Made by a program: the position numbers and the translations under genes. DNA of 64,000 bases, from positions 62,001 through 126,000 of the IMG/VR virus record IMGVR_UViG_3300031521_001337; one strand, written 5' to 3'. The notes beneath the pieces were generated by a model that worked only from the letters and a program-made list of their open reading frames with translations, was not told the DNA's origin and did not search any database. Positions within the stretch are counted from its first letter, which is position 1; every line of letters begins with the position of its first letter. Below are positions 6,160 through 59,602 of the stretch, piece by piece.

Positions 6160-6566
<407 letters not shown>

Positions 6567-6581
6567 TTAAATTGAAATTAA

Positions 6582-14583: not shown

Positions 14584-14655
14584 GTTCGGGTCTTATAGCG
14601 GCTAGTAATCTGGGTTTTCATCCCAGCAAGCGGGGTTCGATTCCCCGTCCGAATA
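14584..14655 (+). tRNA. tRNA-Glu(TTC)
   Basis: Cloverleaf; CTGGG-TTTTCAT-CCCAG. Confidence 0.9.
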
Positions 14656-14676
14656 CAAAATATTGATAAATTAATT

Positions 14677-14895
14677 ATGATAGAAAAAAAATATTATTTA
14701 CTTAGAATAAGTAATCGTGAAACACCAAGACTTATTTTTAAGTCTTCAAGCATATCAGATCTTAATAAAGTTTCAAGATATTTAAAAGATGCTATAGAAG
14801 ATCATGAAATATTTTTTATTACTGAAAATGATAGTAAAGATGTAATTGAAGAATGGATTTCTGAAGAATTAATTTGTGAAATATTCAATAATTAA
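14677..14895 (+). CDS. hypothetical protein
   Basis: 72 aa ORF between tRNAs. Confidence 0.55.
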   Translation: MIEKKYYLLRISNRETPRLIFKSSSISDLNKVSRYLKDAIEDHEIFFITENDSKDVIEEWISEELICEIFNN

Positions 14896-14898
14896 AAT

Positions 14899-14971
14899 AT
14901 AGATGTGGCGCAGTTGGTAGCGTTCTTGCTTTGGGAGCAAGGGGTCGTGAGTTCGAGTCTCACCATCTATA
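14899..14971 (+). tRNA. tRNA-Pro(TGG)
   Basis: CTTGC-TTTGGGA-GCAAG. Confidence 0.93.
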
Positions 14972-14981
14972 CAAAATATAT

Positions 14982-15054
14982 CGCGAAGTGGTAGCAGTGG
15001 TAGCTCGCAAGGCTCATAACCTTGAGGTCGGGGGTTCAATTCCCTCCTTCGCAA
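14982..15054 (+). tRNA. initiator tRNA-fMet(CAT)
   Basis: C1:A72 mismatch; CAAGG-CTCATAA-CCTTG. Confidence 0.9.
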
Positions 15055-15060
15055 CTAAAT

Positions 15061-15149
15061 ATCCTCAACTCTGTGACCATAAATCGGCAATTGATAATGG
15101 TTCAAACAAAGCACAAGACAGCCGAAACTTGATTGCGGCAGAGAGGGAT
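15061..15149 (+). ncRNA. candidate three-way-junction RNA with kissing loops
   Basis: ATCCTC..CTCTG/CAGAG.AGGGAT closing stem; two hairpins with complementary loops GGC and GCC. Confidence 0.5.
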
Positions 15150-15157
15150 GTTAAAAT

Positions 15158-15236
15158 AAAGGGTGGTAGATAGCAATTATGTGTAATTCATAAACGTATA
15201 AGTTGATTAAAGTTCTACTATATACCCAACCCTTTT
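15158..15236 (+). ncRNA. candidate hairpin RNA or terminator
   Basis: AAAGGGT..GGTAGA/TCTACT..ACCCTTT pairing followed by T run. Confidence 0.35.
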
Positions 15237-15257
15237 TAAAACTTAAACAAATAGATA

Positions 15258-15473
15258 ATGGATTGGATTTTAATGATTTTAAACTTATACGCTTATTATT
15301 TGATAAGTAATAAGAGAATAATTGGCTTCATACTTGGAGCAATTGGAAGTATTCTTGGAATAATATTATTCTGGAATATGATTTCAATAGTTATAATGTA
15401 TTTAGCATTTACAGTTTTAAATATTAGAGGATTTTTAAAATGGAATAAAAAATTAAAAGAAGAAACAGTCTAG
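15258..15473 (+). CDS. small three-TM protein, possibly PnuC-like half-transporter
   Basis: W..L...Y.L...K..IGF..G...........Y......N..GF.KW pattern. Confidence 0.45.
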   Translation: MDWILMILNLYAYYLISNKRIIGFILGAIGSILGIILFWNMISIVIMYLAFTVLNIRGFLKWNKKLKEETV

Positions 15474-15474
15474 G

Positions 15475-15608
15475 TCCAGAGGGCTCTAATTGTATATGAG
15501 GGAAGTGACTCTGGAATTCCTCCGTATTTAAAGTATTGGTGAATGTTATATCTAGAATGGTAATTTATTATCGTCGATGATGTTTCTATAATATACAATC
15601 GCAATTAG
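15475..15608 (+). ncRNA. candidate pseudoknotted RNA
   Basis: TCCAGAG/CTCTGGA stem; loop ATTGTATAT is perfectly complementary to ATATACAAT at 15591. Confidence 0.45.
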
Positions 15609-15629
15609 TATATCTTTTTTAAAATATAA

Positions 15630-15792
15630 AATATTGAAATGTTGGCTTGGAAGCAGCAATCATCTAAAGAGTGGGACGAGACTACGTTGATAAACCAATT
15701 CAAGTTGGAATTTAATGTGGTAAGGTAAGTTGGAGGTCACCCCGTAACTGGTAAGGACTGAAATCCCTTTGGCGTAATAGCACATCAATATT
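15630..15792 (+). ncRNA. 23S rRNA H43-H44 (uL11-binding GTPase-associated centre) mimic with 99-nt insertion
   Basis: ATGTTGGCTTGGAAGCAGCAATCATCTAAAGAGT...GCGTAATAGCACA, closed by AATATTGA/TCAATATT. Confidence 0.75.
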
Positions 15793-15802
15793 TTTAAAAA
15801 TT

Positions 15803-15958
15803 AAATGAGTAACATCCGAGAATGGTCGGTGAGTCAGGTAAGAGGGGAACCCAATGCTGACTTAGAATGAGGAATTAAGTCCAGATATCCCTAACGAAAA
15901 GATGTAGGTGTAGTCCCGTGGATAACATGCGTGTAATTGTCCCTCCCGTTACTCATTT
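15803..15958 (+). ncRNA. candidate structured ncRNA (~156 nt)
   Basis: 11-bp closing stem AAATGAGTAAC/GTTACTCATTT; internal CCGA/TCGG and TGAGTCAG/CTGACTTA stems. Confidence 0.6.
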
Positions 15959-15965
15959 TTAAAAT

Positions 15966-16038
15966 GCTCCAGTAGCTCAGTGGATAGAGCATCGGTTTTC
16001 TAAACCGAGGGTCGCTGGTTCAAGTCCAGCTTGGAGTA
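15966..16038 (+). tRNA. tRNA-Arg(TCT)
   Basis: TCGGT-TTTCTAA-ACCGA. Confidence 0.95.
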
Positions 16039-16039
16039 C

Positions 16040-16525
16040 AACTAGGTTTATTTATTATTAGCTACGATAGAATAAACCATCAAAGATGGGGTTGTAGTCT
16101 TAACTTATAAAGTTATTGCCCATACCAATTAACAAAACTAACTAGGGTCGAGCTACATTTTGCCACTGTTAGTATTAGACTTAGAGATCAGAGGTAGCCG
16201 TGACTACTCTAAGTTGAACAAATAAAATCTCTTTAATTGAAGCAAAACGGTAACCAGGGGGAGACACCCAACCCAATAAGGGGTAAGGACGAAAGTTGAG
16301 TACGTAGGTTATAAACCATAGCAGTGGTTGAATGTTTTGGTAAATGTAGTTATGATATGGTTAGTGTTCGCAGAAAAGCCTTCGTTATGACCTAAGTCAA
16401 TATAATTATTCCACTCTGCTTAAAGTGAATAAAGAGATTTTTTATGCCTACTTATACCCTCAAGCTTATATCTTGTTGAAAGGTTATTTGGTGACAGCCT
16501 GGTTCAATCCCAGGAGTAGGTACAA
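16040..16525 (+). ncRNA. candidate large ornate ncRNA (~480 nt)
   Basis: Several long-range helices of 9-12 bp, some crossing; ends in a T-arm-like hairpin CCTGG-TTCAATC-CCAGG. Confidence 0.55.
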
Positions 16526-16526
16526 T

Positions 16527-17006
16527 ATGGAAAGAAGTAAAAATGAATTATTAGCAATTGAAAAAGGATATAAAATAACTATAAATGGTGATATTTTAAA
16601 TCCTAAAGAAAAAATTTTAACAGGAACTATTTATAATAAAAATTATAAAAAATTTAATATTAGATTAAATGAAAAACATATTCCAGTTAAAGTACATAGA
16701 TTACAAGCATATCAAAAATTTGGAGAAATTATTTTTAACGAAGATATAGTAGTTAGACATTTAGATGGTAACGGATTAAATAATTCTTGGGATAATATTG
16801 AAATTGGATCATATAGTGATAATATGATGGATAAACCTAAAGAAGAAAGAATTAGAATTGCATCTAATGCTAATAAAAAATATTCTGATGAATTAGTTTT
16901 AGAAATTAAAGCATACCGAAATTTAGGGCATACTTATAAAGAAATTATGGAAAAATATAATATTAGTAGTAAAGGAACCATTAGTAATATTATTAATAAT
17001 AGATAA
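16527..17006 (+). CDS. HNH homing endonuclease with C-terminal HTH
   Basis: KVHRL.AY...VVRHLDGNGLNN..DNIEIGSYSDN; ATG at 16527 preferred over GTG 16425, which overlaps structured RNA. Confidence 0.85.
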   Translation: MERSKNELLAIEKGYKITINGDILNPKEKILTGTIYNKNYKKFNIRLNEKHIPVKVHRLQAYQKFGEIIFNEDIVVRHLDGNGLNNSWDNIEIGSYSDNMMDKPKEERIRIASNANKKYSDELVLEIKAYRNLGHTYKEIMEKYNISSKGTISNIINNR

Positions 17007-17079
17007 GCCCGTATGGTGAAGTGGTTAACATTCGATTCTGCAAAAATCGCACGCCCAAGTTCGAATCTTGGTATGGGCT
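17007..17079 (+). tRNA. tRNA-Cys(GCA)
   Basis: CGATT-CTGCAAA-AATCG; U73. Confidence 0.92.
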
Positions 17080-17095
17080 CAAAATAAATAAAATT

Positions 17096-17311
17096 ATGAA
17101 ATCAGGAGATATAGTTAAAATGACTAAATCCTTTAAAAGAGGATTAATTGCAAATGATTGTAAAGATCATGTTGATGAATTTGGAAAGTGTATAGGTATA
17201 GTTGAAGATTTAGTATATCCTGATGGTGAAGGTGATGAATGGAATGTTAGATGGTTACCTTCTAAATTAAGATATGGTTATTCTCCAGAAGAACTTGAAA
17301 TAATTAAATAA
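17096..17311 (+). CDS. hypothetical protein (SH3/KOW-like)
   Basis: MKSGDIVKM...; start moved out of tRNA-Cys. Confidence 0.6.
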   Translation: MKSGDIVKMTKSFKRGLIANDCKDHVDEFGKCIGIVEDLVYPDGEGDEWNVRWLPSKLRYGYSPEELEIIK

Positions 17312-17476
17312 AACCAGTAGGAACAACTGAACGTAGATTGAGAAGGCCTAGGAACTTAATAACGAAAGTTTGATAGTTTATGCATACTTGTCTCGCGCAT
17401 CGTATTTGGCGCATGGGTATTATTAAGTTTTTACCAGTTTGGCATACAATCACCGTGGCACAAAAAACTTTAAATC

Positions 17477-17550
17477 GGGGTCTTAGCTCATTTGGCTAGA
17501 GCGATTGCTTTGCAAGCAATAGGTGGTGGGTTCGAAACCCACAGATTCCA
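17477..17550 (+). tRNA. tRNA-Ala(TGC)
   Basis: G3:U70; ATTGC-TTTGCAA-GCAAT. Confidence 0.95.
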
Positions 17551-17642
17551 CTCTTCGAAGAAGCTAATTGGTAAACAGCAATTAGTTATCATTGGAAAGC
17601 TATTAAGGATGTCGAAAGTCTAAGAATAGTTACTGTTTAACT

Positions 17643-17716
17643 GTTTGCGTAGCTCAGTTGGTTAGAGCACCAGCCTGATAAGTTGGGGGTCACAGGTTCA
17701 AGTCCTGTTGTGAACA
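17643..17716 (+). tRNA. tRNA-Ile(GAT)
   Basis: CCAGC-CTGATAA-GTTGG; GU-rich acceptor stem. Confidence 0.9.
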
Positions 17717-17774
17717 CAAAGTAGATATAAAATTAGTATTGGTTCTACAAGATAGTACTGTCTACAATACAACC

Positions 17775-17846
17775 GAGAGCATAGTTCAGTGGTGGAACGC
17801 TTCCCTTACATGGAAGATGTCGGGAGTTCAATTCTCTCTGCTCTTA
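17775..17846 (+). tRNA. tRNA-Val(TAC)
   Basis: CTTCC-CTTACAT-GGAAG. Confidence 0.92.
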
Positions 17847-17899
17847 CAAATAAATTAGGTAAAATTGGGATGATTACCCAAGTTAAATGAAGATGGAAA

Positions 17900-18469
17900 A
17901 TGATTTTAAAACAAGGAATGAAGGTTTTATTAAAACCTAAAGAATGGTATGATGAGAAAAAAGCAGATTTCTTGCCAATATTGACTAATGATATGGAACA
18001 ATATTTTGGTAAAGAACATATTATAAAATCTGTAAAAATTGGAGGATCTCAATTAAGAGGTGTTGAATTATTTAATATTGAAAGTGATTCTAAAGGTTGG
18101 TATTTCTCAATAGATATGGTTGATAAGTATTATGATATGCCAATTACAACTAATGGATATGATAGATTAGTAAGTATGTATAATACCATAGGATCTAGTT
18201 TAACTTCAGGTACTTCAAGTATGTCAAGTGCTTTAAGTATGTATGAACAACTTTCATTACAAGAATTGAGAGGTAGAATGAGAGGTACTACTGATTTTAG
18301 TGGATTATTAGGTTTTTCAAACAGTCTTTCAATTCACGTTAAAGCATTTATACAATATGTTGAGAAGTTTGTTCCATTTGCTTATGATGGAGTTGTAACT
18401 TATACAGATAATGAAAATAATTCATTTACTTTAACACAGTTATATGAGAGATTCACTACCAACAGTTAA
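17900..18469 (+). CDS. paralog array 2, member 1
   Basis: KQGMKVLLKPKEWY...DMEQYFGK...; C-terminal F..Y.EK...NNSFTL..LYE. Confidence 0.8.
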   Translation: MILKQGMKVLLKPKEWYDEKKADFLPILTNDMEQYFGKEHIIKSVKIGGSQLRGVELFNIESDSKGWYFSIDMVDKYYDMPITTNGYDRLVSMYNTIGSSLTSGTSSMSSALSMYEQLSLQELRGRMRGTTDFSGLLGFSNSLSIHVKAFIQYVEKFVPFAYDGVVTYTDNENNSFTLTQLYERFTTNS

Positions 18470-18902
18470 GTATAAAGTAGGACAATGTGTACATTTGAAA
18501 TCTAAAGATTGGTTTGATGTACATGACGATAGAGGTGATGTTAGATTAGGTTTAGCTAGTGATATGAGACCTTATTTTGGAACAATTCAAGTTATTACTC
18601 ATGTTGATACAAATTATTGTGGATATGTTTTAGCAGGTTGCAGTGGTGGTAGTGATAATGAATATACGTATACTGATCAAATGATTGATAATATAAAAAC
18701 TTCTGAATTAATACATAGACATGAAAATATAATTGATCCTGATCAATATTCATGGGATGTTATTACTCCAAATAAATTTCCTGAACATCTTGAAAAGAAT
18801 TATACTCCATTTCTTGATGGTGAAACTTTAACATTTACTGATAAAGATAATAATTCATTTACTTTAAAAGAAATATTTGATGAGTTCTTTAAAGAAGTAT
18901 AA
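18444..18902 (+). CDS. paralog array 2, member 2
   Basis: KYKVGQCVHLKSKDWF...DMRPYFG...EKNYTP...NNSFTLKEIF. Confidence 0.8.
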   Translation: MRDSLPTVKYKVGQCVHLKSKDWFDVHDDRGDVRLGLASDMRPYFGTIQVITHVDTNYCGYVLAGCSGGSDNEYTYTDQMIDNIKTSELIHRHENIIDPDQYSWDVITPNKFPEHLEKNYTPFLDGETLTFTDKDNNSFTLKEIFDEFFKEV

Positions 18903-19254
18903 AATTGGTGATGTTGTTAGACTAAAATCATTAGCTTGGTTTGATGAAATGATGGAAAATCATGTAGCTGTTGAAGGTGGATTAATTTATGATATGCGTC
19001 AGTTTTTTGGTAAAGAACAAGTAATTTCAAATAATGAAGCAGGTTATGCATATATACCTTTATATCACTTAGTAGATGATCCACGTCATTGGAATTTTAG
19101 TAATGATATGATTGAAGGAATAGCTTCATCTTTTCCTGAATATGTAGAAAAGAATTATACACCACTTATTGATGAAGGTGGATTGTATTTTATAAATGAT
19201 AATAATGATGCATATAGTTTAAAAGAAATATATGAGAGGTACAGAGCGATATAA
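18877..19254 (+). CDS. paralog array 2, member 3
   Basis: KYKIGDVVRLKSLAWF...DMRQFFGK...EKNYTP...NDAYSLKEIY. Confidence 0.8.
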   Translation: MMSSLKKYKIGDVVRLKSLAWFDEMMENHVAVEGGLIYDMRQFFGKEQVISNNEAGYAYIPLYHLVDDPRHWNFSNDMIEGIASSFPEYVEKNYTPLIDEGGLYFINDNNDAYSLKEIYERYRAI

Positions 19255-19768
19255 AGTAGGTGATAAAGTATTAATGCAGTCTTTAGAATGGTTTGAAGAT
19301 GCATTAAATGGACGAGGTCCAAGACCTCTTTTTGGAGTTGTTGAAAGCATGCGTAGATTGTTTGGAAAAGTTCAAACAATTACTATGAGTAGTCAATCTA
19401 TGAATGATGAGGATAAATATAAAATATCAGGAGCTAATGAATTTAATATCAGTAATGATATGATTAGAGGTTTACTTGAAGAATTTAGTCAAACAATAAC
19501 TCATGATGGTAGATCAGAATATGTTCATAATGATGTTCTTGCTAGTATGACACCATCGTCAGGAACTTATATCATTAATTATGGAGATGATCCAAGATTT
19601 GGGGGCACAGTAACAAGAACTAAATCATTTTTACAAGTATTAAAGGAGAATTACACTCCGACAATAATTGATGAAGAATTATTATTTGTTAATAAAGATA
19701 ATGAATCCTATACATTAGATGTTTTATATAATAAATTTCATAATACACCTTCAGGATTATTTGAATAA
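19232..19768 (+). CDS. paralog array 2, member 4
   Basis: RYKVGDKVLMQSLEWF...SMRRLFGK...KENYTP...NESYTLDVLY. Confidence 0.8.
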   Translation: MRGTERYKVGDKVLMQSLEWFEDALNGRGPRPLFGVVESMRRLFGKVQTITMSSQSMNDEDKYKISGANEFNISNDMIRGLLEEFSQTITHDGRSEYVHNDVLASMTPSSGTYIINYGDDPRFGGTVTRTKSFLQVLKENYTPTIIDEELLFVNKDNESYTLDVLYNKFHNTPSGLFE

Positions 19769-19788
19769 ACCACTTCGGTGGTTTCTTT
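19767..19788 (+). terminator. intrinsic terminator
   Basis: AAACCAC-TTCG-GTGGTTT then CTTT. Confidence 0.75.
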
Positions 19789-19818
19789 CTGCTATTAACA
19801 ATATTTAACTAAATATAT

Positions 19819-19849
19819 TTTGCACTTTCGAAAATTTTTTGTATCTTTG
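19819..19849 (+). promoter_or_regulatory. Bacteroidota sigmaA-type promoter
   Basis: TTTG-N19-TATCTTTG matches the -33/-7 consensus. Confidence 0.8.
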
Positions 19850-19874
19850 TACTATTAATATAATAGTTCAATTT

Positions 19875-20618
19875 ATGGAAAACAAATATTCAAAAGAAAA
19901 TTTAGAAAAAATTGTAAAAGAAAGTTATTCTTTTGCAGATGTGTGTAGATATTATGGGTTGCCTTTAACTGCTGGTAATTATGAAACAATTCAAACTAAG
20001 ATAAAAAAACATCAAATTAGCACAATTCATTTTAAAAGAAATTCTTCAAATGAAACTAAGAATGTGTACACTTTAGATACAATCTTTTGTAAAGATTCAG
20101 CATATACACAAACAAGTAAGTTAAGAGATAAATTATTAAAAAATAATCTAAAAGAACATAAATGTGAATGTTGTGATAATACTAAATGAATGGGAGAACC
20201 TATTCCATTAGAAACACACCACATAGATGGTATTAAAACTAATAATGAATTAAATAATCTTAAATTATTATGTCCAAACTGTCATGCTTTTACTGATAAT
20301 TATAAAGGTAAAAATGTTAAAGATAAAGTTATAGATGCATTATATTGTAATTCTTGTGGTAATACTATAACAAGTTCTTCTGTAAGTGGTTTATGTTTAA
20401 GTTGTTCTGCTAAACGAATAGCTAATGATTTTTACGATGAACTTGGTATAACTCGTGAATATTTAAAAACTTTAGTTCGCACAGAAACATTTATTAATAT
20501 TGGTAAATTATACAATAGATCAGATAATGCTATTAGAAAATGGTGTAAACATTTTAATATACCTTCTTCAAAGAAAGAAATAAATAGTTTGTCTGATGAT
20601 GAATGGGATAAAATATAA
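19875..20618 (+). CDS. HNH homing endonuclease with one in-frame TGA (20187..20189)
   Basis: ORFs 19839..20189 and 20190..20618 are one frame: CECCDNTK*MGEPIPLETHHIDG...N...NLKLLCPNCH. Confidence 0.8.
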
Positions 20619-20623
20619 TTTAA

Positions 20624-20696
20624 GGACTCTAAGCTAATCTGGTGAAAGCGTATGCCTGAAGAGCATGAGAGGTTGGATCAAAACCAACAGAGTCCA
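20624..20696 (+). tRNA. tRNA-Phe(GAA)
   Basis: TATGC-CTGAAGA-GCATG; atypical T-loop ATCAAAA. Confidence 0.88.
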
Positions 20697-20772
20697 CTTA
20701 CGGTTTAGGACCGTTGTTGTTTCGGCAACAAACCACTTGGTAGTGTCGCTACAACCAAGTGGTTATTTACAA

Positions 20773-20845
20773 GATCTGATAGCTCAACTGGTAGAGCATC
20801 GCCCTTTTAAGGCGGGGGTTCTGGGTTCAAATCCCAGTCAGATCA
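20773..20845 (+). tRNA. tRNA-Lys(TTT)
   Basis: TCGCC-CTTTTAA-GGCGG. Confidence 0.95.
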
Positions 20846-20861
20846 CAAAAAAAAAACAATC

Positions 20862-20950
20862 GGGGGTGTGGCGAAATTGGTAGCCGCAGCTAAATATAGG
20901 TTAGACCATAGCGGTCGTGAGACATGGGGGTTCGAAGCCCTCCGCCCCCA
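20862..20950 (+). ncRNA. tRNA-Leu-like RNA with a distorted, 7-nt-expanded anticodon arm
   Basis: Leu-type acceptor, D, variable and T arms; anticodon region GCTA-AATATAGGTTAGACCA-TAGC. Confidence 0.7.
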
Positions 20951-20956
20951 CTAAAT

Positions 20957-21035
20957 TCCCCAATGGCGTAATTGGCAGACGCGTATTCTTCGGAATATGT
21001 CGAGAGACATGTGGGTTCGAGTCCTCCTTGGGGGA
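20957..21035 (+). ncRNA. class II tRNA-like RNA with a UUCG tetraloop in place of the anticodon loop
   Basis: TATTC-TTCG-GAATA; D-arm GCG..CGC; variable arm GTC-GAGA-GAC; acceptor TCCCCAA/TTGGGGG. Confidence 0.7.
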
Positions 21036-21041
21036 GCAAAT

Positions 21042-21122
21042 ATGTCAGTATACAAGCGGTTAAAGTAGTTAGTCTCCAAAACTAATCCGAAAGGTTCGTG
21101 GGTTCAAATCCTACCTGATGTG
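21042..21122 (+). tRNA. tRNA-Trp(CCA) with long variable arm
   Basis: TTAGT-CTCCAAA-ACTAA; variable arm CC-GAAA-GG; G73. Confidence 0.85.
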
Positions 21123-21127
21123 CAAAT

Positions 21128-21210
21128 GCTTGAGTGGCGAAATGGTTAATACGCGTATGCCTTAGGAGCATATGTCGAAAGATGTGTCGGTTCGAGTCCG
21201 ACCTCGAGTA
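21128..21210 (+). tRNA. tRNA-Leu(TAG)
   Basis: TATGC-CTTAGGA-GCATA; class II. Confidence 0.95.
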
Positions 21211-21230
21211 CAAATATAAAAATAGATAAA

Positions 21231-21846
21231 ATGAAATGTTTAGATTATTTAAAAAGAATAGGAGTTAAATTAAATGGCCCTAATGTTCATAAAACTGCAA
21301 TGATTCAACTTTCAGTATGTGAAAGATATGACAAACGATGGAATAGTAAGAATTATTATAATCCTTACACTTTTCAATATGGTCGACGTAAAGAACATTC
21401 AGCTAAAAGTTGGAATCAGATTATAACTCCTCCGATTTTTCCTGATAAACCTAAATATAATTTTGAACGTAAAGAAATAGAAGTTGAAGGATTTAGATTT
21501 TTACAACCCGAGAGTTATATAGATGGTAAAACTTATTTTAAATATGAAGAAACTTCTTTTGTAAGAAAGAATTGGAGACATATTGAAAATGAATGTAAAT
21601 CATATTCTAAAAAATGTGAAGATTATTGGTATTTAAAAGGAATATTTGACGAAAATAACAATTAAGATGGCAGCTAAATGTGTAAAATTAGGATGTGTTC
21701 CTAGAATTAATAATTGGGGAATTAGTTGGTGTACCGAATGTGGTAAATTATTTCCTTTTAATCTAAATCACAAACCGATTAATAAGAATTTTCTTACAGA
21801 AGAATCTAAACTTATTTATGAGAATTATTTAAAATCAAATCAATAA
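21231..21846 (+). CDS. two hypothetical proteins (21231..21665, 21646..21846)
   Basis: ORFs between tRNA blocks. Confidence 0.6.
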
Positions 21847-21853
21847 ATTAAAT

Positions 21854-21943
21854 GGAAGAGTACTCAAGTGCTTTAAGAGGACGGTCTTGAAAATCGTTAG
21901 ATCGTGTAAAAGCGGTGCGTGGGTCGGAATCCCACTTCTTCCA
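21854..21943 (+). tRNA. tRNA-Ser(TGA)
   Basis: ACGGT-CTTGAAA-ATCGT; long variable arm; C19:G56 swap. Confidence 0.88.
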
Positions 21944-21956
21944 CAATAATTAAACT

Positions 21957-22042
21957 GGAAATAGTAACTTACGAGAAGTAAGGCTTGCCTGCTAAGCAAA
22001 GCGTTCGTTTAGGCGAATAGGAGTTGGAATCCTACATTTCCG
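21957..22042 (+). tRNA. tRNA-Ser(GCT), atypical D and T arms
   Basis: TTGC-CTGCTAA-GCAA; variable arm TTCG..CGAA; G73. Confidence 0.75.
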
Positions 22043-22061
22043 CAAATTAAAACATAAACAG

Positions 22062-23006
22062 ATGAAGATATTATTTATTGGTAATGGAATTTTTGGAGTT
22101 CCAGCATTAAAAAAATTACATGAAATTTATCAAGTTACAGTTATAACAACACCACCACGACGTTTCGGTAGAGTAGTACAAAATACACCTATTTATATTG
22201 CTGGTAAAGCTTTAGGTTGTTTAGTATATACTGCTAATGATATTAATGAACTTGAACATCGTATAATTAGTACTGATTTTGATTTAATTGTTGTTGCATC
22301 TTATGGACAAATAATTAAAATGAAAATACTTGATTCTGCTAAATATGGTGCAATTAATATTCATGGTTCATTATTACCGAAGTATAGAGGTGCTTCTTGT
22401 ATTCAAGCTGCTATTTTGAATAGAGATTCTGAAACAGGAGTTACATTTATTAAAATGAATGCTGCTGTAGATGCTGGAAGTATTATTACTCAACGTAAAA
22501 TGTATCTACCTGTAGGAATGGGATATATTATGCTTCTTGATCAATTATCAAACTTAGCTGCTGAAAATATTCTTCTAACAATCACTAAATATACTCGTGG
22601 AGTTATTTTAAGACCACAGATAGAAAGTGAAGCTACATATTGTTGTAAAATAACTAAAGATGATTGTTTACTTGATTTTAATAAAAATGTTGATGATGTA
22701 TATGCAAAAATGAAGGCATATGAATCGAATCACGGAGTATTCTTTTATTTACCAGATAACAATACTGAAGTTAAAATTAAAGATGCATGTATGTATACTG
22801 GACGTGTTAAAGGTGATTTCTTAGATGGAGAATTAATTTGTGTTGAAAATAATAAACTTTTTATAAATTGTAATAAAAGTAGTCTTCAGATTGTTTCATT
22901 ACAATTACCTAATAAAAAGGTTATGTCAGCTAGAGATTTTATTAATGGTCATAAGAAGTTAATCACACAATTTGCTGATTTACAAATAATTGTACATAAT
23001 GTATGA
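22062..23006 (+). CDS. fmt: methionyl-tRNA formyltransferase
   Basis: KILFIG...FG..AL..L, TTP.RR.GR, VASYG.I, INIHGSLLPKYRGA..IQ, ETGVT, VDAG.I; ~314 aa. Confidence 0.92.
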   Translation: MKILFIGNGIFGVPALKKLHEIYQVTVITTPPRRFGRVVQNTPIYIAGKALGCLVYTANDINELEHRIISTDFDLIVVASYGQIIKMKILDSAKYGAINIHGSLLPKYRGASCIQAAILNRDSETGVTFIKMNAAVDAGSIITQRKMYLPVGMGYIMLLDQLSNLAAENILLTITKYTRGVILRPQIESEATYCCKITKDDCLLDFNKNVDDVYAKMKAYESNHGVFFYLPDNNTEVKIKDACMYTGRVKGDFLDGELICVENNKLFINCNKSSLQIVSLQLPNKKVMSARDFINGHKKLITQFADLQIIVHNV

Positions 23007-23011
23007 AAAAT

Positions 23012-23095
23012 GGGATGTTATACCGTAGCTTATAGCGGGCCTGACTGTAACTTAGGTGTCTTCGGACTCGGGTGGTTTGACTCCACCACATCCCA
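23012..23095 (+). tRNA. tRNA-Tyr(GTA)
   Basis: CCTGA-CTGTAAC-TTAGG; variable arm GTC-TTCG-GAC. Confidence 0.88.
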
Positions 23096-23171
23096 CTAAA
23101 GTATTAGTCTTTAGACAATAAGCAAGATAAAAATAAGGAGTGGCACTTGCGTTCACCAATAATACTTTTCA

Positions 23172-23244
23172 CACGATGTAGCTCAGTTGGTAGAGTAGTC
23201 CTTTCATGCAGGACGGGTCAGGAGTTCAAATCTCTTCATCGTGA
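23172..23244 (+). tRNA. tRNA(CAT), elongator Met or lysidine Ile2
   Basis: GTCCT-TTCATGC-AGGAC; C1:G72 paired; unusual G37. Confidence 0.85.
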
Positions 23245-23262
23245 CAAACTAAACAAAATAAA

Positions 23263-23629
23263 ATGGATAAATTATTATTAGTACTTTCAATTCTTACATT
23301 ACCTGGAACATTGTTACTTATTACAGGTTTAGCAGATCTTTCTACTGTTAAAGAAGAGAAGGATAAAATAACGTATAATATTGCAGTATTTCTTAGATTT
23401 ACATCAATATTAACATTAGCATTAGCTATATTTGGAATTATTGCTTACATTTTAAATTAAAATTATGACTCTGTATAAAAAACTAAAGTGGACGTTCTTT
23501 GCAACACCACGACATGCAACTGAATGGGCTGAACAAAATGAAATGAGAATAACAGCTGCATTAGGAGTTGTTTTTGTAACATTTTTAATATTATTATTAT
23601 TTGGTCAACTTCCAACATGGGCTGGATAA
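23263..23629 (+). CDS. two small membrane proteins (23263..23460, 23465..23629)
   Basis: Hydrophobic ORFs; the second (54 aa) is below the ORF track cutoff. Confidence 0.55.
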
Positions 23630-23730
23630 ATGACGCTGCTCGATGAGTAGATGTCCTGGTGGGTCGCATTACCGAAATTGCGATAGTAGAACATGGGATA
23701 GCACTACTTAAAAAAGAGCCCTCCCACCAC

Positions 23731-23802
23731 GCCCGAGTAGCTCAGTGATAGAGCAATGGTATTGTAAACCATTTGTCGTCGGTTTGACCCCGACCTTGGG
23801 CT
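23731..23802 (+). tRNA. tRNA-Thr(TGT)
   Basis: ATGGT-ATTGTAA-ACCAT; A19:U56. Confidence 0.9.
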
Positions 23803-23819
23803 CTATTAAAAATAAAGAG

Positions 23820-24200
23820 ATGATTAAAAACATTATTAAAAGTTGGAAACATATTCCATATACATTGAAACATTATATAGCTTTTTTAAAACTTGAAAAG
23901 AAGTTATTAGGTTATTATAAGTATAAGTTTCATGATTTGGATAAAGTGTTAATGTATCTATTCATTCCTTTTATAGGAACACATCGAATTAAAATGATAC
24001 ATCGTAAGATTAATAGACATCATATTACATTTTATAAAACGAATTGTAATTATGAAGAAGCTATTATTGATTGGGAATGTTCAAGGTTTACAAAAGCTGA
24101 TAAACCTAGAACAGCAAGAGAAATTGTTAATGATAGACCTGATAAAAATTCAAGACACTATTATGAACTAGTAAGACAATTAAATAAATTTAATTTATAA
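23820..24200 (+). CDS. HD-like His-rich hypothetical protein
   Basis: HD..K, H...N.HH, E.IIDWECSR motifs; start moved out of tRNA-Thr. Confidence 0.6.
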   Translation: MIKNIIKSWKHIPYTLKHYIAFLKLEKKLLGYYKYKFHDLDKVLMYLFIPFIGTHRIKMIHRKINRHHITFYKTNCNYEEAIIDWECSRFTKADKPRTAREIVNDRPDKNSRHYYELVRQLNKFNL

Positions 24201-24202
24201 TT

Positions 24203-24765
24203 ATGGATAAAAATCAAAGTGATAATATTTGTCCTAATTGTGGGGCTATATTAAATGCAAATACAGCGTGTACAGATGGTACTAAAGCTGGACCTGGTGA
24301 TATTTCAATATGTTTGTATTGTCAATCAGTTAATATATTATCAGAACATATGACAACTCTTAAACTTTCACAAGAAGAATATGACGCTCTAGATGCTGAT
24401 ATAAGAGCTAAAATTGAAAAAGTCATAGAAGTAGCTAAGGCAATGAACATTAAATACAAAGAATAATGACAGTAAGAGAATTATATGAGTATTTAGGAGG
24501 ATTACCTTATAATAGTCAACATTGGGATGATGAAGTTGTTATTCCTTTAGACTATCCTTCTATGGGTAGTCGTATATCAGAACCTATTCTTCGAACTAAT
24601 TTTGGTTTTGATTGGGATTCTAGTAAATGTTTTATAGTAACAGAAGCCAAACTTGTAAAGAGTTTTAAAGCTCCTGGAACAGGTGAACCTTTAGAAGTAA
24701 TTGAATTAAAGAATTTGACTAAACCGTCGAATCCTAAAGATAAAAGTGTTGGAGAAACTTCGTAA
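24203..24765 (+). CDS. two hypothetical proteins (24203..24466 Zn-finger CPNC/CLYC, 24466..24765)
   Basis: Coupled ORFs. Confidence 0.6.
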
Positions 24766-24818
24766 GAAGACTGATCTAGTCTCGGTAGGCACGTGCACAG
24801 TGATCCTACCCGTACCAT

Positions 24819-24892
24819 GCAGTAATAGCTCAGTTGATCAGAGCACTCGCCTTCCAAGCCTGGGGTCGTGGGTTTGAACCCCACTTACTGCT
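24819..24892 (+). tRNA. tRNA-Gly(TCC)
   Basis: CTTCCAA loop; U73; anticodon stem has two mismatches. Confidence 0.8.
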
Positions 24893-24899
24893 CTTACAT

Positions 24900-24973
24900 G
24901 GTGACATTAGCTCAATTGGTAGAGCGCTGGTTTGTGGTGCCGGTCGTTGCGGGTTCGATCCCCGTGTGTCACA
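24900..24973 (+). tRNA. tRNA-His(GTG)
   Basis: CTGGT-TTGTGGT-GCCGG; encoded G-1, but A73. Confidence 0.88.
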
Positions 24974-24996
24974 CAAGAACAATTAAATTTTAAATT

Positions 24997-25362
24997 ATGT
25001 ATTACAAAGCAATTAAAAGAAATTCAGATGGTCGTGAATTGTATTCAGAAGTATTATGTCTTATTAAAGTAAAAGATTATGTGAAAGCAACACGTAATTA
25101 TACAGAAGTTATTCCAATTATTCCAGAAGTAATTGAAATTGTACCTGAAACAATGCGACAAATGGGTTGGAGGAGACAATCATTTTATTTAGATGATACT
25201 CAAGGAAATCAACACAATTTTTTCAATTGTGATAATTTTAGTCATTTAGCACAAATCTTTCGAGATAAAAAAGTTTTTGTGTATCATTCTCGTAGAGGTG
25301 GAGAAATCCGTCGCTCTATAGTTGGTACAATTGATGAAACCAATACAGAACATTGGTTTTAA
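24997..25362 (+). CDS. hypothetical protein
   Basis: 121 aa ORF. Confidence 0.65.
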   Translation: MYYKAIKRNSDGRELYSEVLCLIKVKDYVKATRNYTEVIPIIPEVIEIVPETMRQMGWRRQSFYLDDTQGNQHNFFNCDNFSHLAQIFRDKKVFVYHSRRGGEIRRSIVGTIDETNTEHWF

Positions 25363-25373
25363 CATGGTATAAA

Positions 25374-25394
25374 GGTTCGTAGCTCAGTGGTTAG
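25374..25394 (+). pseudogene. 5' fragment of a tRNA gene
   Basis: GGTTCGTAGCTCAGTGGTTAG with no anticodon or T arm following. Confidence 0.5.
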
Positions 25395-25417
25395 TAAACA
25401 AGTAAAAATTAGTAAAA

Positions 25418-25595
25418 ATGGATGAAATGAGAGTGTGTAAAACACATGGTGAAACAACATTTAGATCCAAATGAAAAAGATTTTGGAATATCAGCAAAAG
25501 GATATACTAGAGCATGAGAAAAAGTTAAAGAAGAATTAGATAAATGTATTATGGTCTGTGCTAATTGTCACAGAGAAATACATTCAGAAGAATAA
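25418..25595 (+). pseudogene. internally deleted HNH endonuclease remnant
   Basis: MDEMRVCKTHGETT joined out of frame to HLDPNEKDFGISAKGYTRA*EKVKEELDKCIMVCANCHREIH. Confidence 0.75.
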
Positions 25596-25596
25596 T

Positions 25597-25683
25597 GTAC
25601 ACGTTGCCTTAGTTGGTCGACAGGTCCAGGCTGTTAACCTGGTGAATAATATTCCACCGCAGGTTCGAATCCTGCCGTGTACG
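25597..25683 (+). tRNA. tRNA-Asn(GTT) with long variable arm
   Basis: CCAGG-CTGTTAA-CCTGG; GAAT-AAT-ATTC variable stem; G73. Confidence 0.85.
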
Positions 25684-25692
25684 CTTCTATAT

Positions 25693-25763
25693 TGACCGAT
25701 GGTGTAATGGTAGCACACATCCCTTTGACGGATGTCGCCCAGGTTCGAGTCCTGGTTGGTCAA
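25693..25763 (+). tRNA. tRNA-Gln(TTG)
   Basis: CATCC-CTTTGAC-GGATG; U1:A72. Confidence 0.93.
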
Positions 25764-25785
25764 CTAAATTATAAATTATAAAATA

Positions 25786-26064
25786 ATGAATGAATACGGT
25801 GAAGATTCAGAGTATAAATGGTATTTCTTTACAGGTTGTCTTATGGAATGTGCTAATGCAAGTTGTTGTCTTTATGGTGGTAATATTGGCTATGATAAAT
25901 TTAGTTTTAGTGATATGATAAAAGTAAATGGAACAAGAGGTTATCCTGGACAATGTTCAGCAACTGTTGGACTACTTATTATTGATGAACATTTAGATCA
26001 TCCTAAATTTATAGAATGGATGAATAACTTACCTGATGAAATAAGAAATAATTTACCTTTTTAA
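25786..26064 (+). CDS. Cys-containing hypothetical protein
   Basis: 92 aa; ends FIEW..LP.EIRNNLPF. Confidence 0.7.
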   Translation: MNEYGEDSEYKWYFFTGCLMECANASCCLYGGNIGYDKFSFSDMIKVNGTRGYPGQCSATVGLLIIDEHLDHPKFIEWMNNLPDEIRNNLPF

Positions 26065-26074
26065 AAATAGAATA

Positions 26075-26422
26075 ATGAGATTAGTAACAGTAAATTTAGA
26101 TATAGATCCTGAATCTGGACTTGAAGAAGAATTTGATGATGTACCACAATCAGAATGGTGATTTTGGACATGTTATTACAAAAGTGAACCCGATGGACTT
26201 TGTTGTGTATATGGTTATCAAGATCCAGATCAACCACATCAGTTAATATATAGTCAACAAATTGAAGTTTGTGGTCGATATGTTAGAGGTTTTGGTTCAT
26301 GTTGTTATGATCATGAATTATTTGCATTAACTAATAATACAGATAATTACGAATTTATATGTTGGTTTGAAAAACTAAGTTATGAAATTAGAAAAGAATT
26401 AATGATAATATTACCTTTTTAA
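26075..26422 (+). CDS. paralog of 25786..26064 with one in-frame TGA (26159..26161); absent from the ORF track
   Basis: MRLVTV...QSEW*FWTCYY...LCCVYG...FICWFEKLSYEIRKELMIILPF*. Confidence 0.7.
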
Positions 26423-26576
26423 TAAAAATATGATTAAAAAATTAATTAAATGGTTTAAGAAACCAAAGAAACAAAAGACTTGTTTTGCTGATGCAGATGG
26501 TATGTCACATGCAGGATGTGCTTCTATGCCTTCTTGTGATAAATGTTCTTGTTACAGATATAAACTGTAGTAAAAT

Positions 26577-26668
26577 GTCTAAGTGGCGAAGTTTGGCTGA
26601 AACGCATAAGACTTAAAATCTTATACCCTTTGTGGTGAACACCGTGGGTTCGATCCCCACCTTAGATA
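26577..26668 (+). tRNA. tRNA-Leu(TAA)
   Basis: TAAGA-CTTAAAA-TCTTA; class II. Confidence 0.92.
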
Positions 26669-26735
26669 CTTAAAAATACTAGTAAATCTTAATTTATTTA
26701 AGTTGGCTTCGTGGGTTAAAAGGAATCCACACTAT

Positions 26736-26809
26736 AGCTTGTTAGTTCAGTTGATTAGAATGCCGCCCTGTCACGGCGGAGGTCGCCGGTTTGAGCCCGG
26801 TACAAGCTG
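26736..26809 (+). tRNA. tRNA-Asp(GTC)
   Basis: CCGCC-CTGTCAC-GGCGG; G73; A19:U56. Confidence 0.93.
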
Positions 26810-26814
26810 CTTAG

Positions 26815-58711: not shown

Positions 58712-59602
58712 ATGGGTAAAACATTAACAACACAAGAATTTATTGAGAAAGCAAAATTAGTTCATAATGAAAAATACGATTATTCTAAAGTTGATTATAA
58801 AAAATCATCTAAGAAAGTAATAATTGTATGTAAAGAACATGGTGAATTTGAACAAACTCCGAATATTCATTTAGATAATCATGGGTGTCCAGCTTGTTCT
58901 AAATTAAAAAAGCGAAACGATATTTCAAAAATTCCAAATATAAAATTATCTAATTATATTGTTTCAAATCCGATTGAACTTTCAGGAAAATTAGAAATAA
59001 TAGGATCTATTTATTTATTTATAAATCCTATAAATAATAAAAAATATATTGGAAAAACAATTATGAAATTAAGTAGTAGATTTTCTGCACATTTAAATAA
59101 ATCAAAACATTCTGATTACTATTTTTATAGATCCATCCGTAAATATGGATGAAATGTATTTGAAAAACATGTATTATATCAAACAGAAATAGTTGATAAC
59201 AATAAAGAAAATAAAAAATTAATAGATTCTATTATTTGTGGAAAAGAAATAGAATTTATTAATTTATTTGAATCAAATAATCCTAAATTTGGATATAATG
59301 AAACAAATGGAGGTGAAGGAACAGCTGGATGTAAATTTTCTAATAAAGTTAAAGAAAAAATGAGTAATGCTAGAAAAGGTAAAGGAAATTCAATGTATGG
59401 AAAAACATTAGATAAAAATCCTAGATCTATTCCAATTTTACAATTAGATTCTAATAATAATATAATAAAAAGATGGAGCTGTGCTGTTGAAATACATCAA
59501 GAATTAGGATACTCTATTAGTAGAATTAGAGATTGTTACAATAATAAATGTGAGATATATAAAAAATATAAATGGATAAAAGAAGAAAATTATGGAAAAT
59601 AA
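58712..59602 (+). CDS. GIY-YIG homing endonuclease (Zn-ribbon N-terminus, NUMOD3/HTH-like tail) with one in-frame TGA (59150..59152)
   Basis: CKEHG...GCPAC; SIY..IN..NNKKYIGKT; SIRKYG*NVFEK...E..FI...GYN...GG; frame continues into 59360..59602. Confidence 0.82.

What the first reader, a model, noticed from the sequence alone, without database searches (positions are those of the whole stretch)
26075..26422. Hidden gene: intact paralog interrupted only by one TGA
Missed by the ORF track. It aligns with upstream 25786..26064 (KWYFFTGC versus EW*FWTCY; SCCLYG versus LCCVYG; EIRNNLPF* versus EIRKELMIILPF*). The TGA falls at an aromatic column and the frame is otherwise clean to the homologous stop. 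This is the only non-nuclease example, so it argues against selection for nuclease inactivation as the sole explanation.
Basis: seen in the sequence. Interest (0 to 1): 0.6.

Follow-up and report, generated by a model that had tools for sequence, protein, structure and literature searches.

The report
Phage gene using TGA for tryptophan
The "broken" small gene is most likely intact: this 205-kb peat phage reads TGA as tryptophan with its own tRNA, a known kind of stop-codon recoding, so the finding is real but ordinary for such phages.

Summary
Window 26075..26422 is a 115-codon frame with one TGA (26159..26161, codon 29). It is a true paralog of 25786..26064 (BLASTP E=9e-8).

The cause lies outside the window. 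The window is part of a 213-kb virus record from peat whose late genes use TGA as a sense codon:
- 177 in-frame TGA against 144 TGG in 82 late ORFs.
- Coding density rises from 0.78 to 0.91 when TGA is read.
- A 74-nt tRNA with anticodon UCA sits at genome 30014..30087.

At the five TGA codons of the terminase, 80 homologs carry only TGG (338) or TGA (62), so TGA means Trp. Every ortholog of the target has Trp at the column, and TGG wherever DNA could be read. The TGAs in the window's HNH and GIY-YIG nucleases also fall at conserved Trp.

The plus-strand block holding the window otherwise uses TGA as a stop. The target is therefore one of about six plus-block genes with sense TGA; the others are homing endonucleases and a tail lysozyme.

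dN/dS downstream of the TGA is about 1.2, but it is about 1.0 between two intact orthologs, and all family-invariant residues are kept.

Verdict: a real gene, probably made in full only once the suppressor tRNA is present. It is a new member of a known kind (Borges et al.). Its function is unknown, and a recent pseudogene is not excluded.

The parts
26075..26422 (+). Target gene: 115 codons plus TAA, a small Cys-rich protein of unknown function. Residues 1-21 are predicted disordered. Residues about 25-115 form a five-stranded small beta-barrel plus two helices.
   Evidence: Translation. Orthologs of 45-66% identity, all full length. The public collection holds the same 115-aa product read with TGA=W. 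AF2 model pLDDT 77.
26159..26161 (+). In-frame TGA, codon 29, read as Trp. It lies in the first beta-strand (27-31, EWWFW) of the predicted fold.
   Evidence: Orthologs have W here, encoded TGG in L025-L028 and L109-L116. TGA=Trp in this phage clade. The decoder, tRNA(UCA), lies outside the window at genome 30014..30087, minus strand.
25786..26064 (+). Upstream paralog, 92 aa, with no TGA (Tyr at the homologous column).
   Evidence: BLASTP E=9e-8 to the target. Its orthologs are 89% identical with omega about 0.4. It is absent from relatives L025/L026.
25597..25764 (+). tRNA-Asn(GUU) and tRNA-Gln(UUG) directly upstream of the gene pair.
   Evidence: ARAGORN; Rfam tRNA.
26430..26570 (+). 46-aa Cys-rich ORF directly downstream, conserved in relatives (93% aa identity, omega 0.28).
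26577..26810 (+). tRNA-Leu(UAA) and tRNA-Asp(GUC) downstream. The gene trio sits inside the phage's tRNA array.
19875..20618 (+). HNH homing-endonuclease gene with one in-frame TGA at 20187..20189, at a conserved Trp.
   Evidence: W in three annotated phage HNH homologs and in L120.
25422..25595 (+). 57-codon HNH-like ORF (...CANCHREIH) with two in-frame TGAs (25428, 25515). It is absent from the relatives' loci.
   Evidence: Megablast hit to annotated HNH endonucleases. The relatives have a gap of only about 270 nt here.
58712..59602 (+). GIY-YIG/NUMOD3 homing-endonuclease gene with one in-frame TGA at 59150..59152, at an invariant Trp.
   Evidence: W in all 7 full-length homologs.

Best explanation
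The target is an intact protein-coding gene of a TGA-recoded (code-4-like) jumbo phage. A phage-encoded tRNA with anticodon UCA reads UGA as tryptophan, so codon 29 is a synonymous TGG-to-TGA change and the product is a 115-residue protein.

Shown:
- TGA is a sense codon at Trp columns in this phage clade.
- The tRNA(UCA) gene exists.
- Orthologs have TGG at this codon.
- The frame and all family-invariant residues are intact.

Inferred:
- The plus-strand block around the gene otherwise uses TGA as a terminator and TGG for Trp. Ribosomes should therefore stop after 28 disordered residues until the suppressor tRNA has accumulated. The full protein would then be made late or at a low level.
- Homing endonucleases and a tail lysozyme are the other sense-TGA genes in this block. 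They would be gated in the same way.

The protein's own role is unknown. It is a fast-evolving, dispensable accessory protein with an SH3/Sm-like barrel, and it sits in the tRNA array.
For: Genome-wide recoding:
- Coding density rises from 0.779 (table 11) to 0.905 with TGA read, and from 0.55-0.9 to 0.96-1.0 in the minus-strand blocks.
- 82 late ORFs hold 177 in-frame TGA against 144 TGG, and all end in TAA or TAG.
- These ORFs include TerL, portal and major capsid.

Meaning of TGA:
- At our five TerL TGA codons, 80 homolog loci have only TGG (338) or TGA (62).
- The HNH and GIY-YIG TGAs sit at conserved Trp.

Decoder:
- A 74-nt cloverleaf tRNA, anticodon loop CUUCAAA, Rfam tRNA 62.9 bits.
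- It has A1-U72 and G73, which I recall as bacterial TrpRS identity elements. This is a lead from memory, not a test.

The target itself:
- Every ortholog has W at the column.
- The codon is TGG in 11 relatives' loci, read directly in L025, L026 and L115 and reported as translating by table 11 in the rest.
- There is no indel against the 115-aa orthologs.
- All 17 invariant columns of the family alignment are kept.
- Nucleotide differences per 30-nt bin are 1,1,1,13,0,11,10,15,0,10,17,1. Conserved motifs stand between hypervariable loops, which is not uniform decay.
- Omega for the same stretch is 1.04 between two intact orthologs.
- The predicted fold starts at the strand that holds codon 29, so the truncated 28-mer would be disordered.

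Chance: only 3-8% of random nonsense mutations in this block would be TGG>TGA, yet all mid-ORF stops checked are exactly that.

Precedent: Borges et al. describe the same scheme, including a TGA-rich homing endonuclease inside an early gene.
Against: - No direct evidence of translation past the TGA. No RNA run holds the gene.
- The surrounding block uses TGA as a genuine stop: about 10 of 118 window ORFs, three of them as TGATAA. It also avoids sense TGA (366 TGG), so decoding may be inefficient when this gene is expressed.
- Our lineage is somewhat accelerated: 36 against 22 lineage-specific nucleotide changes with L115 as outgroup. One otherwise near-invariant residue has changed (N99 to E).
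- The gene is dispensable. A wastewater relative lacks exactly this gene.
- All copies in hand are identical in DNA, so selection since the TGA arose cannot be measured.
- No release factor or TrpRS gene was found that would sharpen a code switch.
Confidence: 0.78

Rival explanations
1. Recent pseudogene. A TGG-to-TGA mutation inactivated a dispensable accessory gene that is expressed while TGA still terminates. The open frame downstream is merely young.
For: - Orthologs have TGG.
- Omega is 1.2 downstream of the TGA against 0.25 upstream.
- Our lineage is accelerated, 36 against 22 changes.
- The gene is absent from one relative and its paralog from others.
- The block uses TGA as a stop.
Against: - Omega about 1 is a property of the family, also seen between intact orthologs.
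- Changes are clustered between segments with zero differences, and all invariant residues are kept.
- There is no indel and no second stop, despite 29% nucleotide divergence downstream.
- The phage demonstrably decodes TGA as Trp.
- All other mid-ORF stops in the block are also TGA at Trp columns, which has a chance of about 1e-4 under random nonsense mutation.
Confidence: 0.17
2. The host itself uses code 4 (or 25), so TGA is an ordinary sense codon throughout and nothing is gated.
For: TGA is sense in most late genes.
Against: - The plus block ends about 10% of its genes in TGA, several as ATGA overlaps or conserved TGATAA.
- That block uses TGG 366 times against a handful of sense TGAs.
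- The phage carries its own tRNA(UCA).
- TGA aligns with Trp, not Gly.
- Sister TerL lineages at about 75% identity have no TGA at all.
Confidence: 0.03
3. The TGA encodes selenocysteine in a Cys-rich protein (ARAGORN labels the tRNA 'SeC').
For: - ARAGORN's label for anticodon UCA.
- The protein has 7 Cys.
Against: - The tRNA is 74 nt with a short variable loop and a standard cloverleaf. It does not have the long-arm form that I recall for Sec tRNAs.
- The column is W or Y in all relatives, never C.
- TGA aligns with TGG at 400 of 400 TerL codon comparisons.
Confidence: 0.01

Closest known systems
TGA-recoded (code 4) phages with suppressor tRNA, e.g. the Agate and Jade clades of Borges et al. 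(bioRxiv 10.1101/2021.08.26.457843)
   Same: - Low-GC large phage.
- TGA aligns with Trp in terminase, and a tRNA(UCA) is encoded.
- Recoding is concentrated in structural and lysis genes, while a standard-code block still uses TGA as a stop.
- Homing endonucleases in the early region carry in-frame TGA.
- Close standard-code relatives exist.
   Different: - It comes from peat, not a gut.
- The unit length is about 205 kb.
- No RF1 or TrpRS was found, unlike Jade.
- It has a 25-gene tRNA array and a tmRNA.
- Whether it belongs to any named clade was not tested.
TAG-to-Gln (code 15) crAss-like and Lak phages, with proteomic proof (Peters et al., PMC9523058)
   Same: A phage-specific stop-codon reassignment on a standard-code host, served by a suppressor tRNA. 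Table-11 gene callers split or miss the genes.
   Different: A different codon and amino acid. Here there is no proteomic evidence.
UGA read-through by tRNA-Trp in RNA phage Q-beta (A1 protein); from my own knowledge
   Same: UGA is read as Trp at a defined gene position, giving a longer product.
   Different: Q-beta relies on low-level misreading by the host tRNA-Trp(CCA) at a real stop. Here a dedicated tRNA(UCA) exists and the codon replaces an internal conserved Trp.
Mollicute genetic code 4; from my own knowledge
   Same: UGA is read as Trp by a tRNA with anticodon UCA.
   Different: In Mollicutes the reassignment is organism-wide with no TGA stops. Here TGA is both a stop (plus block) and Trp (late genes) in one genome.

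Membership tests
Stop-codon-recoded phage, TGA to Trp (code 4 type) | Many in-frame TGA in conserved genes, and coding density restored when TGA is read | tested here: met
   Density rises from 0.779 to 0.905. There are 177 sense TGA in 82 late ORFs, and ORFs of up to 2984 codons are open only with TGA read.
Stop-codon-recoded phage, TGA to Trp (code 4 type) | TGA aligns with Trp in homologs | tested here: met
   TerL: 338 TGG and 62 TGA, nothing else, at 5 codons across 80 loci. The same holds for the GIY-YIG gene, the HNH gene and the target.
Stop-codon-recoded phage, TGA to Trp (code 4 type) | Phage-encoded suppressor tRNA with anticodon UCA | tested here: met
   Genome c[30014,30087], 74 nt, Rfam tRNA 62.9 bits, clean cloverleaf.
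Stop-codon-recoded phage, TGA to Trp (code 4 type) | A standard-code-compatible (early) gene set beside recoded late and lysis genes | tested here: met
   The plus block 34-130 kb has 366 TGG, TGA used as a terminator, and only about 6 genes with mid-ORF TGA. TerL, portal, capsid and tail lysozyme are recoded. Timing itself is inferred, not measured.
Stop-codon-recoded phage, TGA to Trp (code 4 type) | Trp actually inserted at UGA (proteomics or tRNA charging) | not testable with these tools
   No proteome is available, and no RNA holder was found among public runs.
Pseudogene | Loss of constraint specific to the interrupted copy: uniform decay, lost invariant residues, further stops or frameshifts | tested here: not met
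   There are no further stops or indels, the invariant residues are kept, the changes are clustered, and omega is about 1 also between intact orthologs. A very recent inactivation cannot be excluded, because all copies are identical.
Selenoprotein gene | Cys/Sec column in homologs, a long-arm tRNA-Sec, and a SECIS element | tested here: not met
   The column is W or Y. The tRNA is 74 nt with a short variable loop. A SECIS element was not searched for.
Any curated protein family (Pfam, PHROGs) | A significant profile match | tested here: not met
   No Pfam hit, and only a PHROG at E=0.054. An exhaustive profile search found 7 hits, 6 of them in this small phage family. The best fold matches have Z of 4.0 or less, SH3/Sm/PWWP-like.

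The most novel reading that the evidence does not exclude
One peat jumbo phage uses TGA in two ways at once. In its plus-strand block TGA is a terminator, often backed by an immediate TAA. In late genes it is Trp. A very small set of plus-block genes carries single sense TGAs as a deliberate suppressor-tRNA-gated delay or throttle: three or four homing endonucleases, a tail lysozyme and this fast-evolving beta-barrel protein. If so, the target would be a late-acting accessory factor (for example an anti-defence or host-interaction protein) whose premature expression is harmful.
Probability: 0.3. Interest if true: 0.5.

Novelty: new member of a known kind. Interest (0 to 1): 0.3.

Why it matters
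- Annotation. The window should be annotated with TGA read as Trp, or at least checked under both codes. Table-11 ORF tracks miss or split this gene and the nucleases, and they break most late genes of the phage.
- Habitat. The finding extends TGA-to-Trp recoding with a phage tRNA(UCA) to an abundant, roughly 205-kb phage of peat soils, outside the gut settings where it was described.
- A test case. The handful of sense TGAs in a block that otherwise terminates at TGA offers a clean natural test of the idea that recoded stops time gene expression.
- Limits. The protein itself is a tiny orphan family, and nothing here points to a new mechanism.

Tried and rejected
- Pfam and PHROGs on the target and its paralog gave nothing usable.
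- PDB sequence alignments of portal and TerL were too distant to fix the meaning of TGA; the columns held R, N, V, D, I, W, W and F. They were replaced by 80 closer TerL loci.
- PDB alignments for the two nucleases were uninformative at the TGA column. They were replaced by closer homologs.
- The 5555-aa hit P0026 of the profile search lies in LVIVD repeats, and I treat it as spurious.
- Fold searches (Foldseek PDB and BFVD, VIA-align wide) gave only weak SH3/Sm/PWWP-like barrels with Z of 4.0 or less. No function follows from them.
The viral and metagenome scans with P0004 found only the window's own species.
- No RF-1/RF-2 or class-Ib synthetase domain was found in the genome.
- Public runs: no RNA holder was found. 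The laid contigs showed zero differences in peat and a deletion of the gene in a wastewater relative, but nothing on expression.
- The apparent terminal repeat of the record is 14% diverged without gaps, so it is not a clean repeat.
- Selenocysteine and a code-4 host were considered and rejected (see rivals).
- An internal restart after the TGA was rejected: there is no in-frame ATG, GTG or TTG until codon 110.

Full report
**The observation**

Window 26075..26422 (+) reads MRLVTVNLDIDPESGLEEEFDDVPQSEW*FWTCYY...MIILPF*. It has one internal stop, TGA at 26159..26161 (codon 29), and a terminal TAA. Table 11 lists no ORF of 30 aa or more in this frame. The ORF just upstream, 25786..26064 (92 aa), is a genuine paralog: BLASTP E=9e-8, 28% identity over 93 columns, with the alignment running across the TGA.

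**What the window is**

The window is bases 62001..126000 of a 213,486-bp virus record with 29.6% GC, rated complete by CheckV. The same phage is assembled from many peat metagenomes, once as a 205,452-bp contig. The target DNA is identical, TGA included, in all ten loci I compared and in two further peat runs. The TGA is therefore not an assembly error and is fixed in this population.

**The genome reads TGA as a sense codon**

My own crude ORF caller (ATG starts, greedy choice) gives these figures:
- Coding density is 0.779 under table 11 and 0.905 when TGA is read.
- In the minus-strand blocks (1-34 kb and 130-205 kb) density rises from 0.55-0.9 to 0.96-1.0. It is unchanged in the plus-strand block 34-130 kb that holds the window.
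- The 82 late minus-strand ORFs hold 177 in-frame TGA against 144 TGG. All end in TAA (76) or TAG (6).
- They include the large terminase (5 TGA), portal (3) and major capsid (1).

ARAGORN finds a 74-nt tRNA with anticodon UCA at genome c[30014,30087]. Rfam's tRNA model scores it at 62.9 bits, and it folds as a clean cloverleaf with anticodon loop CUUCAAA. Its A1-U72 pair and G73 discriminator match what I recall as bacterial Trp identity elements. That is a lead from memory, not a test.

**TGA means Trp**

- At the five TGA codons of our terminase, 80 homologous loci from IMG/VR carry only TGG (338 cases) or TGA (62 cases).
- Fifteen of those homologs (76-100% identical) are themselves recoded. 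The 65 at about 75% identity have no TGA at all. This is a recoded subclade with standard-code sisters.
- The TGAs in the window's GIY-YIG gene (59150) and HNH gene (20187) fall at Trp in 7 of 7 and 4 of 4 homologs respectively.

**The target's own relatives**

A word search and an exhaustive profile search find only a tiny family:
- the window's own product, already in the public collection as a 115-aa protein with W29 (P0003);
- its 28-aa truncated call (P0025);
- an ortholog cluster at 63-66% identity (P0004 and members);
- a more distant ortholog (P0021, 45%);
- the paralog lineage (P0001, P0020, P0023, and the 49-aa fragment P0024).

Every ortholog has W at the TGA column, and the paralogs have Y. 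In eleven relatives' loci the gene translates by table 11. I read the codon itself as TGG in L025, L026 and L115.

**Is the part after the TGA decaying?**

- Against L109, omega is 0.25 for codons 1-28 and 1.22 for codons 30-115 (dN 0.39, dS 0.32). Neighbouring genes have omega 0.1-0.6 and 83-96% amino-acid identity.
- The same stretch has omega 1.04 between the two intact, TGG-bearing orthologs L109 and L115.
- 28 of the 39 amino-acid sites where ours and L109 differ also differ in the outgroup L115. Lineage-specific nucleotide changes are 36 (ours) against 22 (L109).
- The differences per 30-nt bin are 1,1,1,13,0,11,10,15,0,10,17,1. Untouched motifs (GLCCVYGYQD, ELFALTNNTD, ILPF) alternate with loops that differ at 33-57% of positions.
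- All 17 invariant columns of the 12-sequence family alignment are kept in our copy, and one near-invariant residue (N99) is changed.
- There is no indel against the 115-aa orthologs and no second stop.

High omega is thus a property of the family's variable loops, and most of the divergence happened under constraint. What cannot be measured is selection since the TGA arose, because all copies in hand are identical.

**Structure**

An AlphaFold2 model from the 12-sequence alignment has mean pLDDT 77.
- Residues 1-21 are disordered.
- The fold begins with strand 27-31 (EWWFW), which contains codon 29. Four more strands and two helices follow.
- A product stopped at the TGA would be a disordered 28-mer.
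- Fold searches give only weak small-barrel matches (SH3, Sm/LSm, PWWP; Z of 4.0 or less) and no functional lead.

**The local code context**

- In the window 88 ORFs end in TAA, 18 in TAG and 12 in TGA. Two of those twelve are the nuclease fragments.
- Several TGA stops are ATGA overlaps or are followed at once by TAA. The TGATAA ending is conserved in relatives.
- The plus block has 366 TGG.
- Its only mid-ORF TGAs are in the HNH gene, a 57-codon HNH-like ORF, the target, the GIY-YIG gene, a NUMOD4-HNH gene (genome 45864..46376) and a tail lysozyme (genome 129708..130415).
- Only 3-8% of random nonsense mutations in this block would be TGG>TGA. A set of interruptions that are all TGA at Trp columns is therefore not random breakage.
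- The pattern (homing endonucleases and lysis genes carrying recoded stops beside a standard-code early set) is the one Borges et al. describe and interpret as delayed translation until the suppressor appears.

**Dispensability**

- Relatives L025 and L026 have the target but lack the paralog.
- L109-L114 have both genes.
- A wastewater relative has the paralog and the 46-aa gene but skips 26063..26424, which is exactly the target gene.

The pair is an accessory, variable locus embedded in the tRNA array.

**Conclusion**

The gene is best read as intact, with TGA decoded as Trp by the phage's tRNA(UCA). Full-length product is probably available only after that tRNA has accumulated (confidence 0.78; the timing is inferred). 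A recent inactivation of a dispensable gene remains possible (0.17). Selenocysteine and a code-4 host are rejected on the evidence above.

This is a new member of a known kind of system, and the protein's function remains unknown.

Noticed in passing
window 8070, 28569, 42437 (TGA followed at once by TAA): Three plus-block genes end in TGATAA. The same tandem stop is conserved in relatives L026, L027, L109, L112 and L113. It would limit read-through to one residue once the suppressor tRNA is active.
   Followed up: partly
window 20862-20951, 20956-21037, 21042-21123: There are three tandem odd tRNA-like genes with long variable arms. ARAGORN calls one 'Tyr' with anticodon AUA. A second has a 6-nt anticodon loop, CUUCGG. 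The third is a Trp(CCA) of 82 nt. Rfam's tRNA model reaches only the last (43.5 bits). None has anticodon UCA.
   Followed up: partly
window 6160-6568: Phage-encoded tmRNA (Rfam 107 bits; tag GNKTISFARTAFMAAA). It sits beside a 24-gene tRNA array at 14584-26810.
   Followed up: no
window 25422-25595: A 57-codon HNH-like ORF (...CANCHREIHSEE) with two in-frame TGAs lies between the 121-aa gene and tRNA-Asn. Relatives have no room for it there, so it looks like a recent insertion.
   Followed up: partly
window 26053-26064 and 26411-26422: Both paralogs end in the same 12 nt, TTACCTTTTTAA (LPF stop). A wastewater relative (run X20) lacks 26063..26424, exactly the target gene, and other relatives lack the paralog. 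The pair is a presence/absence polymorphism.
   Followed up: partly
genome 1-8180 and 205307-213486 (L002, L011): The two ends of the record repeat each other at an offset of 205,306. Without gaps they show 1182 mismatches in 8180 positions. This looks like a wrap-around through a second strain rather than a clean terminal repeat. A sister contig is 205,452 bp long.
   Followed up: partly
genome 198645-203174, plus strand (L010 7645-12174): A cluster of 12 small plus-strand ORFs is almost fully recoded: 17 TGA against 3 TGG, and 11 of the 12 carry TGA. Recoding therefore does not simply follow strand.
   Followed up: no
genome 10654-12111 and 181519-182622 (L002, L009): Two heavily recoded late proteins carry the Fib_succ_major domain (Pfam E of 1e-20 to 1e-21). 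This may hint at a Fibrobacter- or Bacteroidota-type host. Gene starts also lack Shine-Dalgarno-like leaders.
   Followed up: no
L012 1-25 and 5818-6189; L026 1881-2813: A methionyl-tRNA formyltransferase-like gene (Formyl_trans_N/C) and a YqeY-like gene flank the tRNA array. These are further translation-related genes in the phage.
   Followed up: no
genome 22081-30545 (L003 4081-12545): The tRNA(UCA) gene sits in a minus-strand stretch with few sense TGAs. Its neighbours there include a GroEL-like chaperonin, a PD-(D/E)XK nuclease and a weak HNH/HTH protein. The heavily recoded structural genes lie further along the same strand.
   Followed up: partly
L025 290-540: The 540-bp ENA contig carrying a TGG ortholog departs from the gene after about codon 80 and continues into unrelated sequence. 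This may be a chimeric assembly or a rearranged relative.
   Followed up: no
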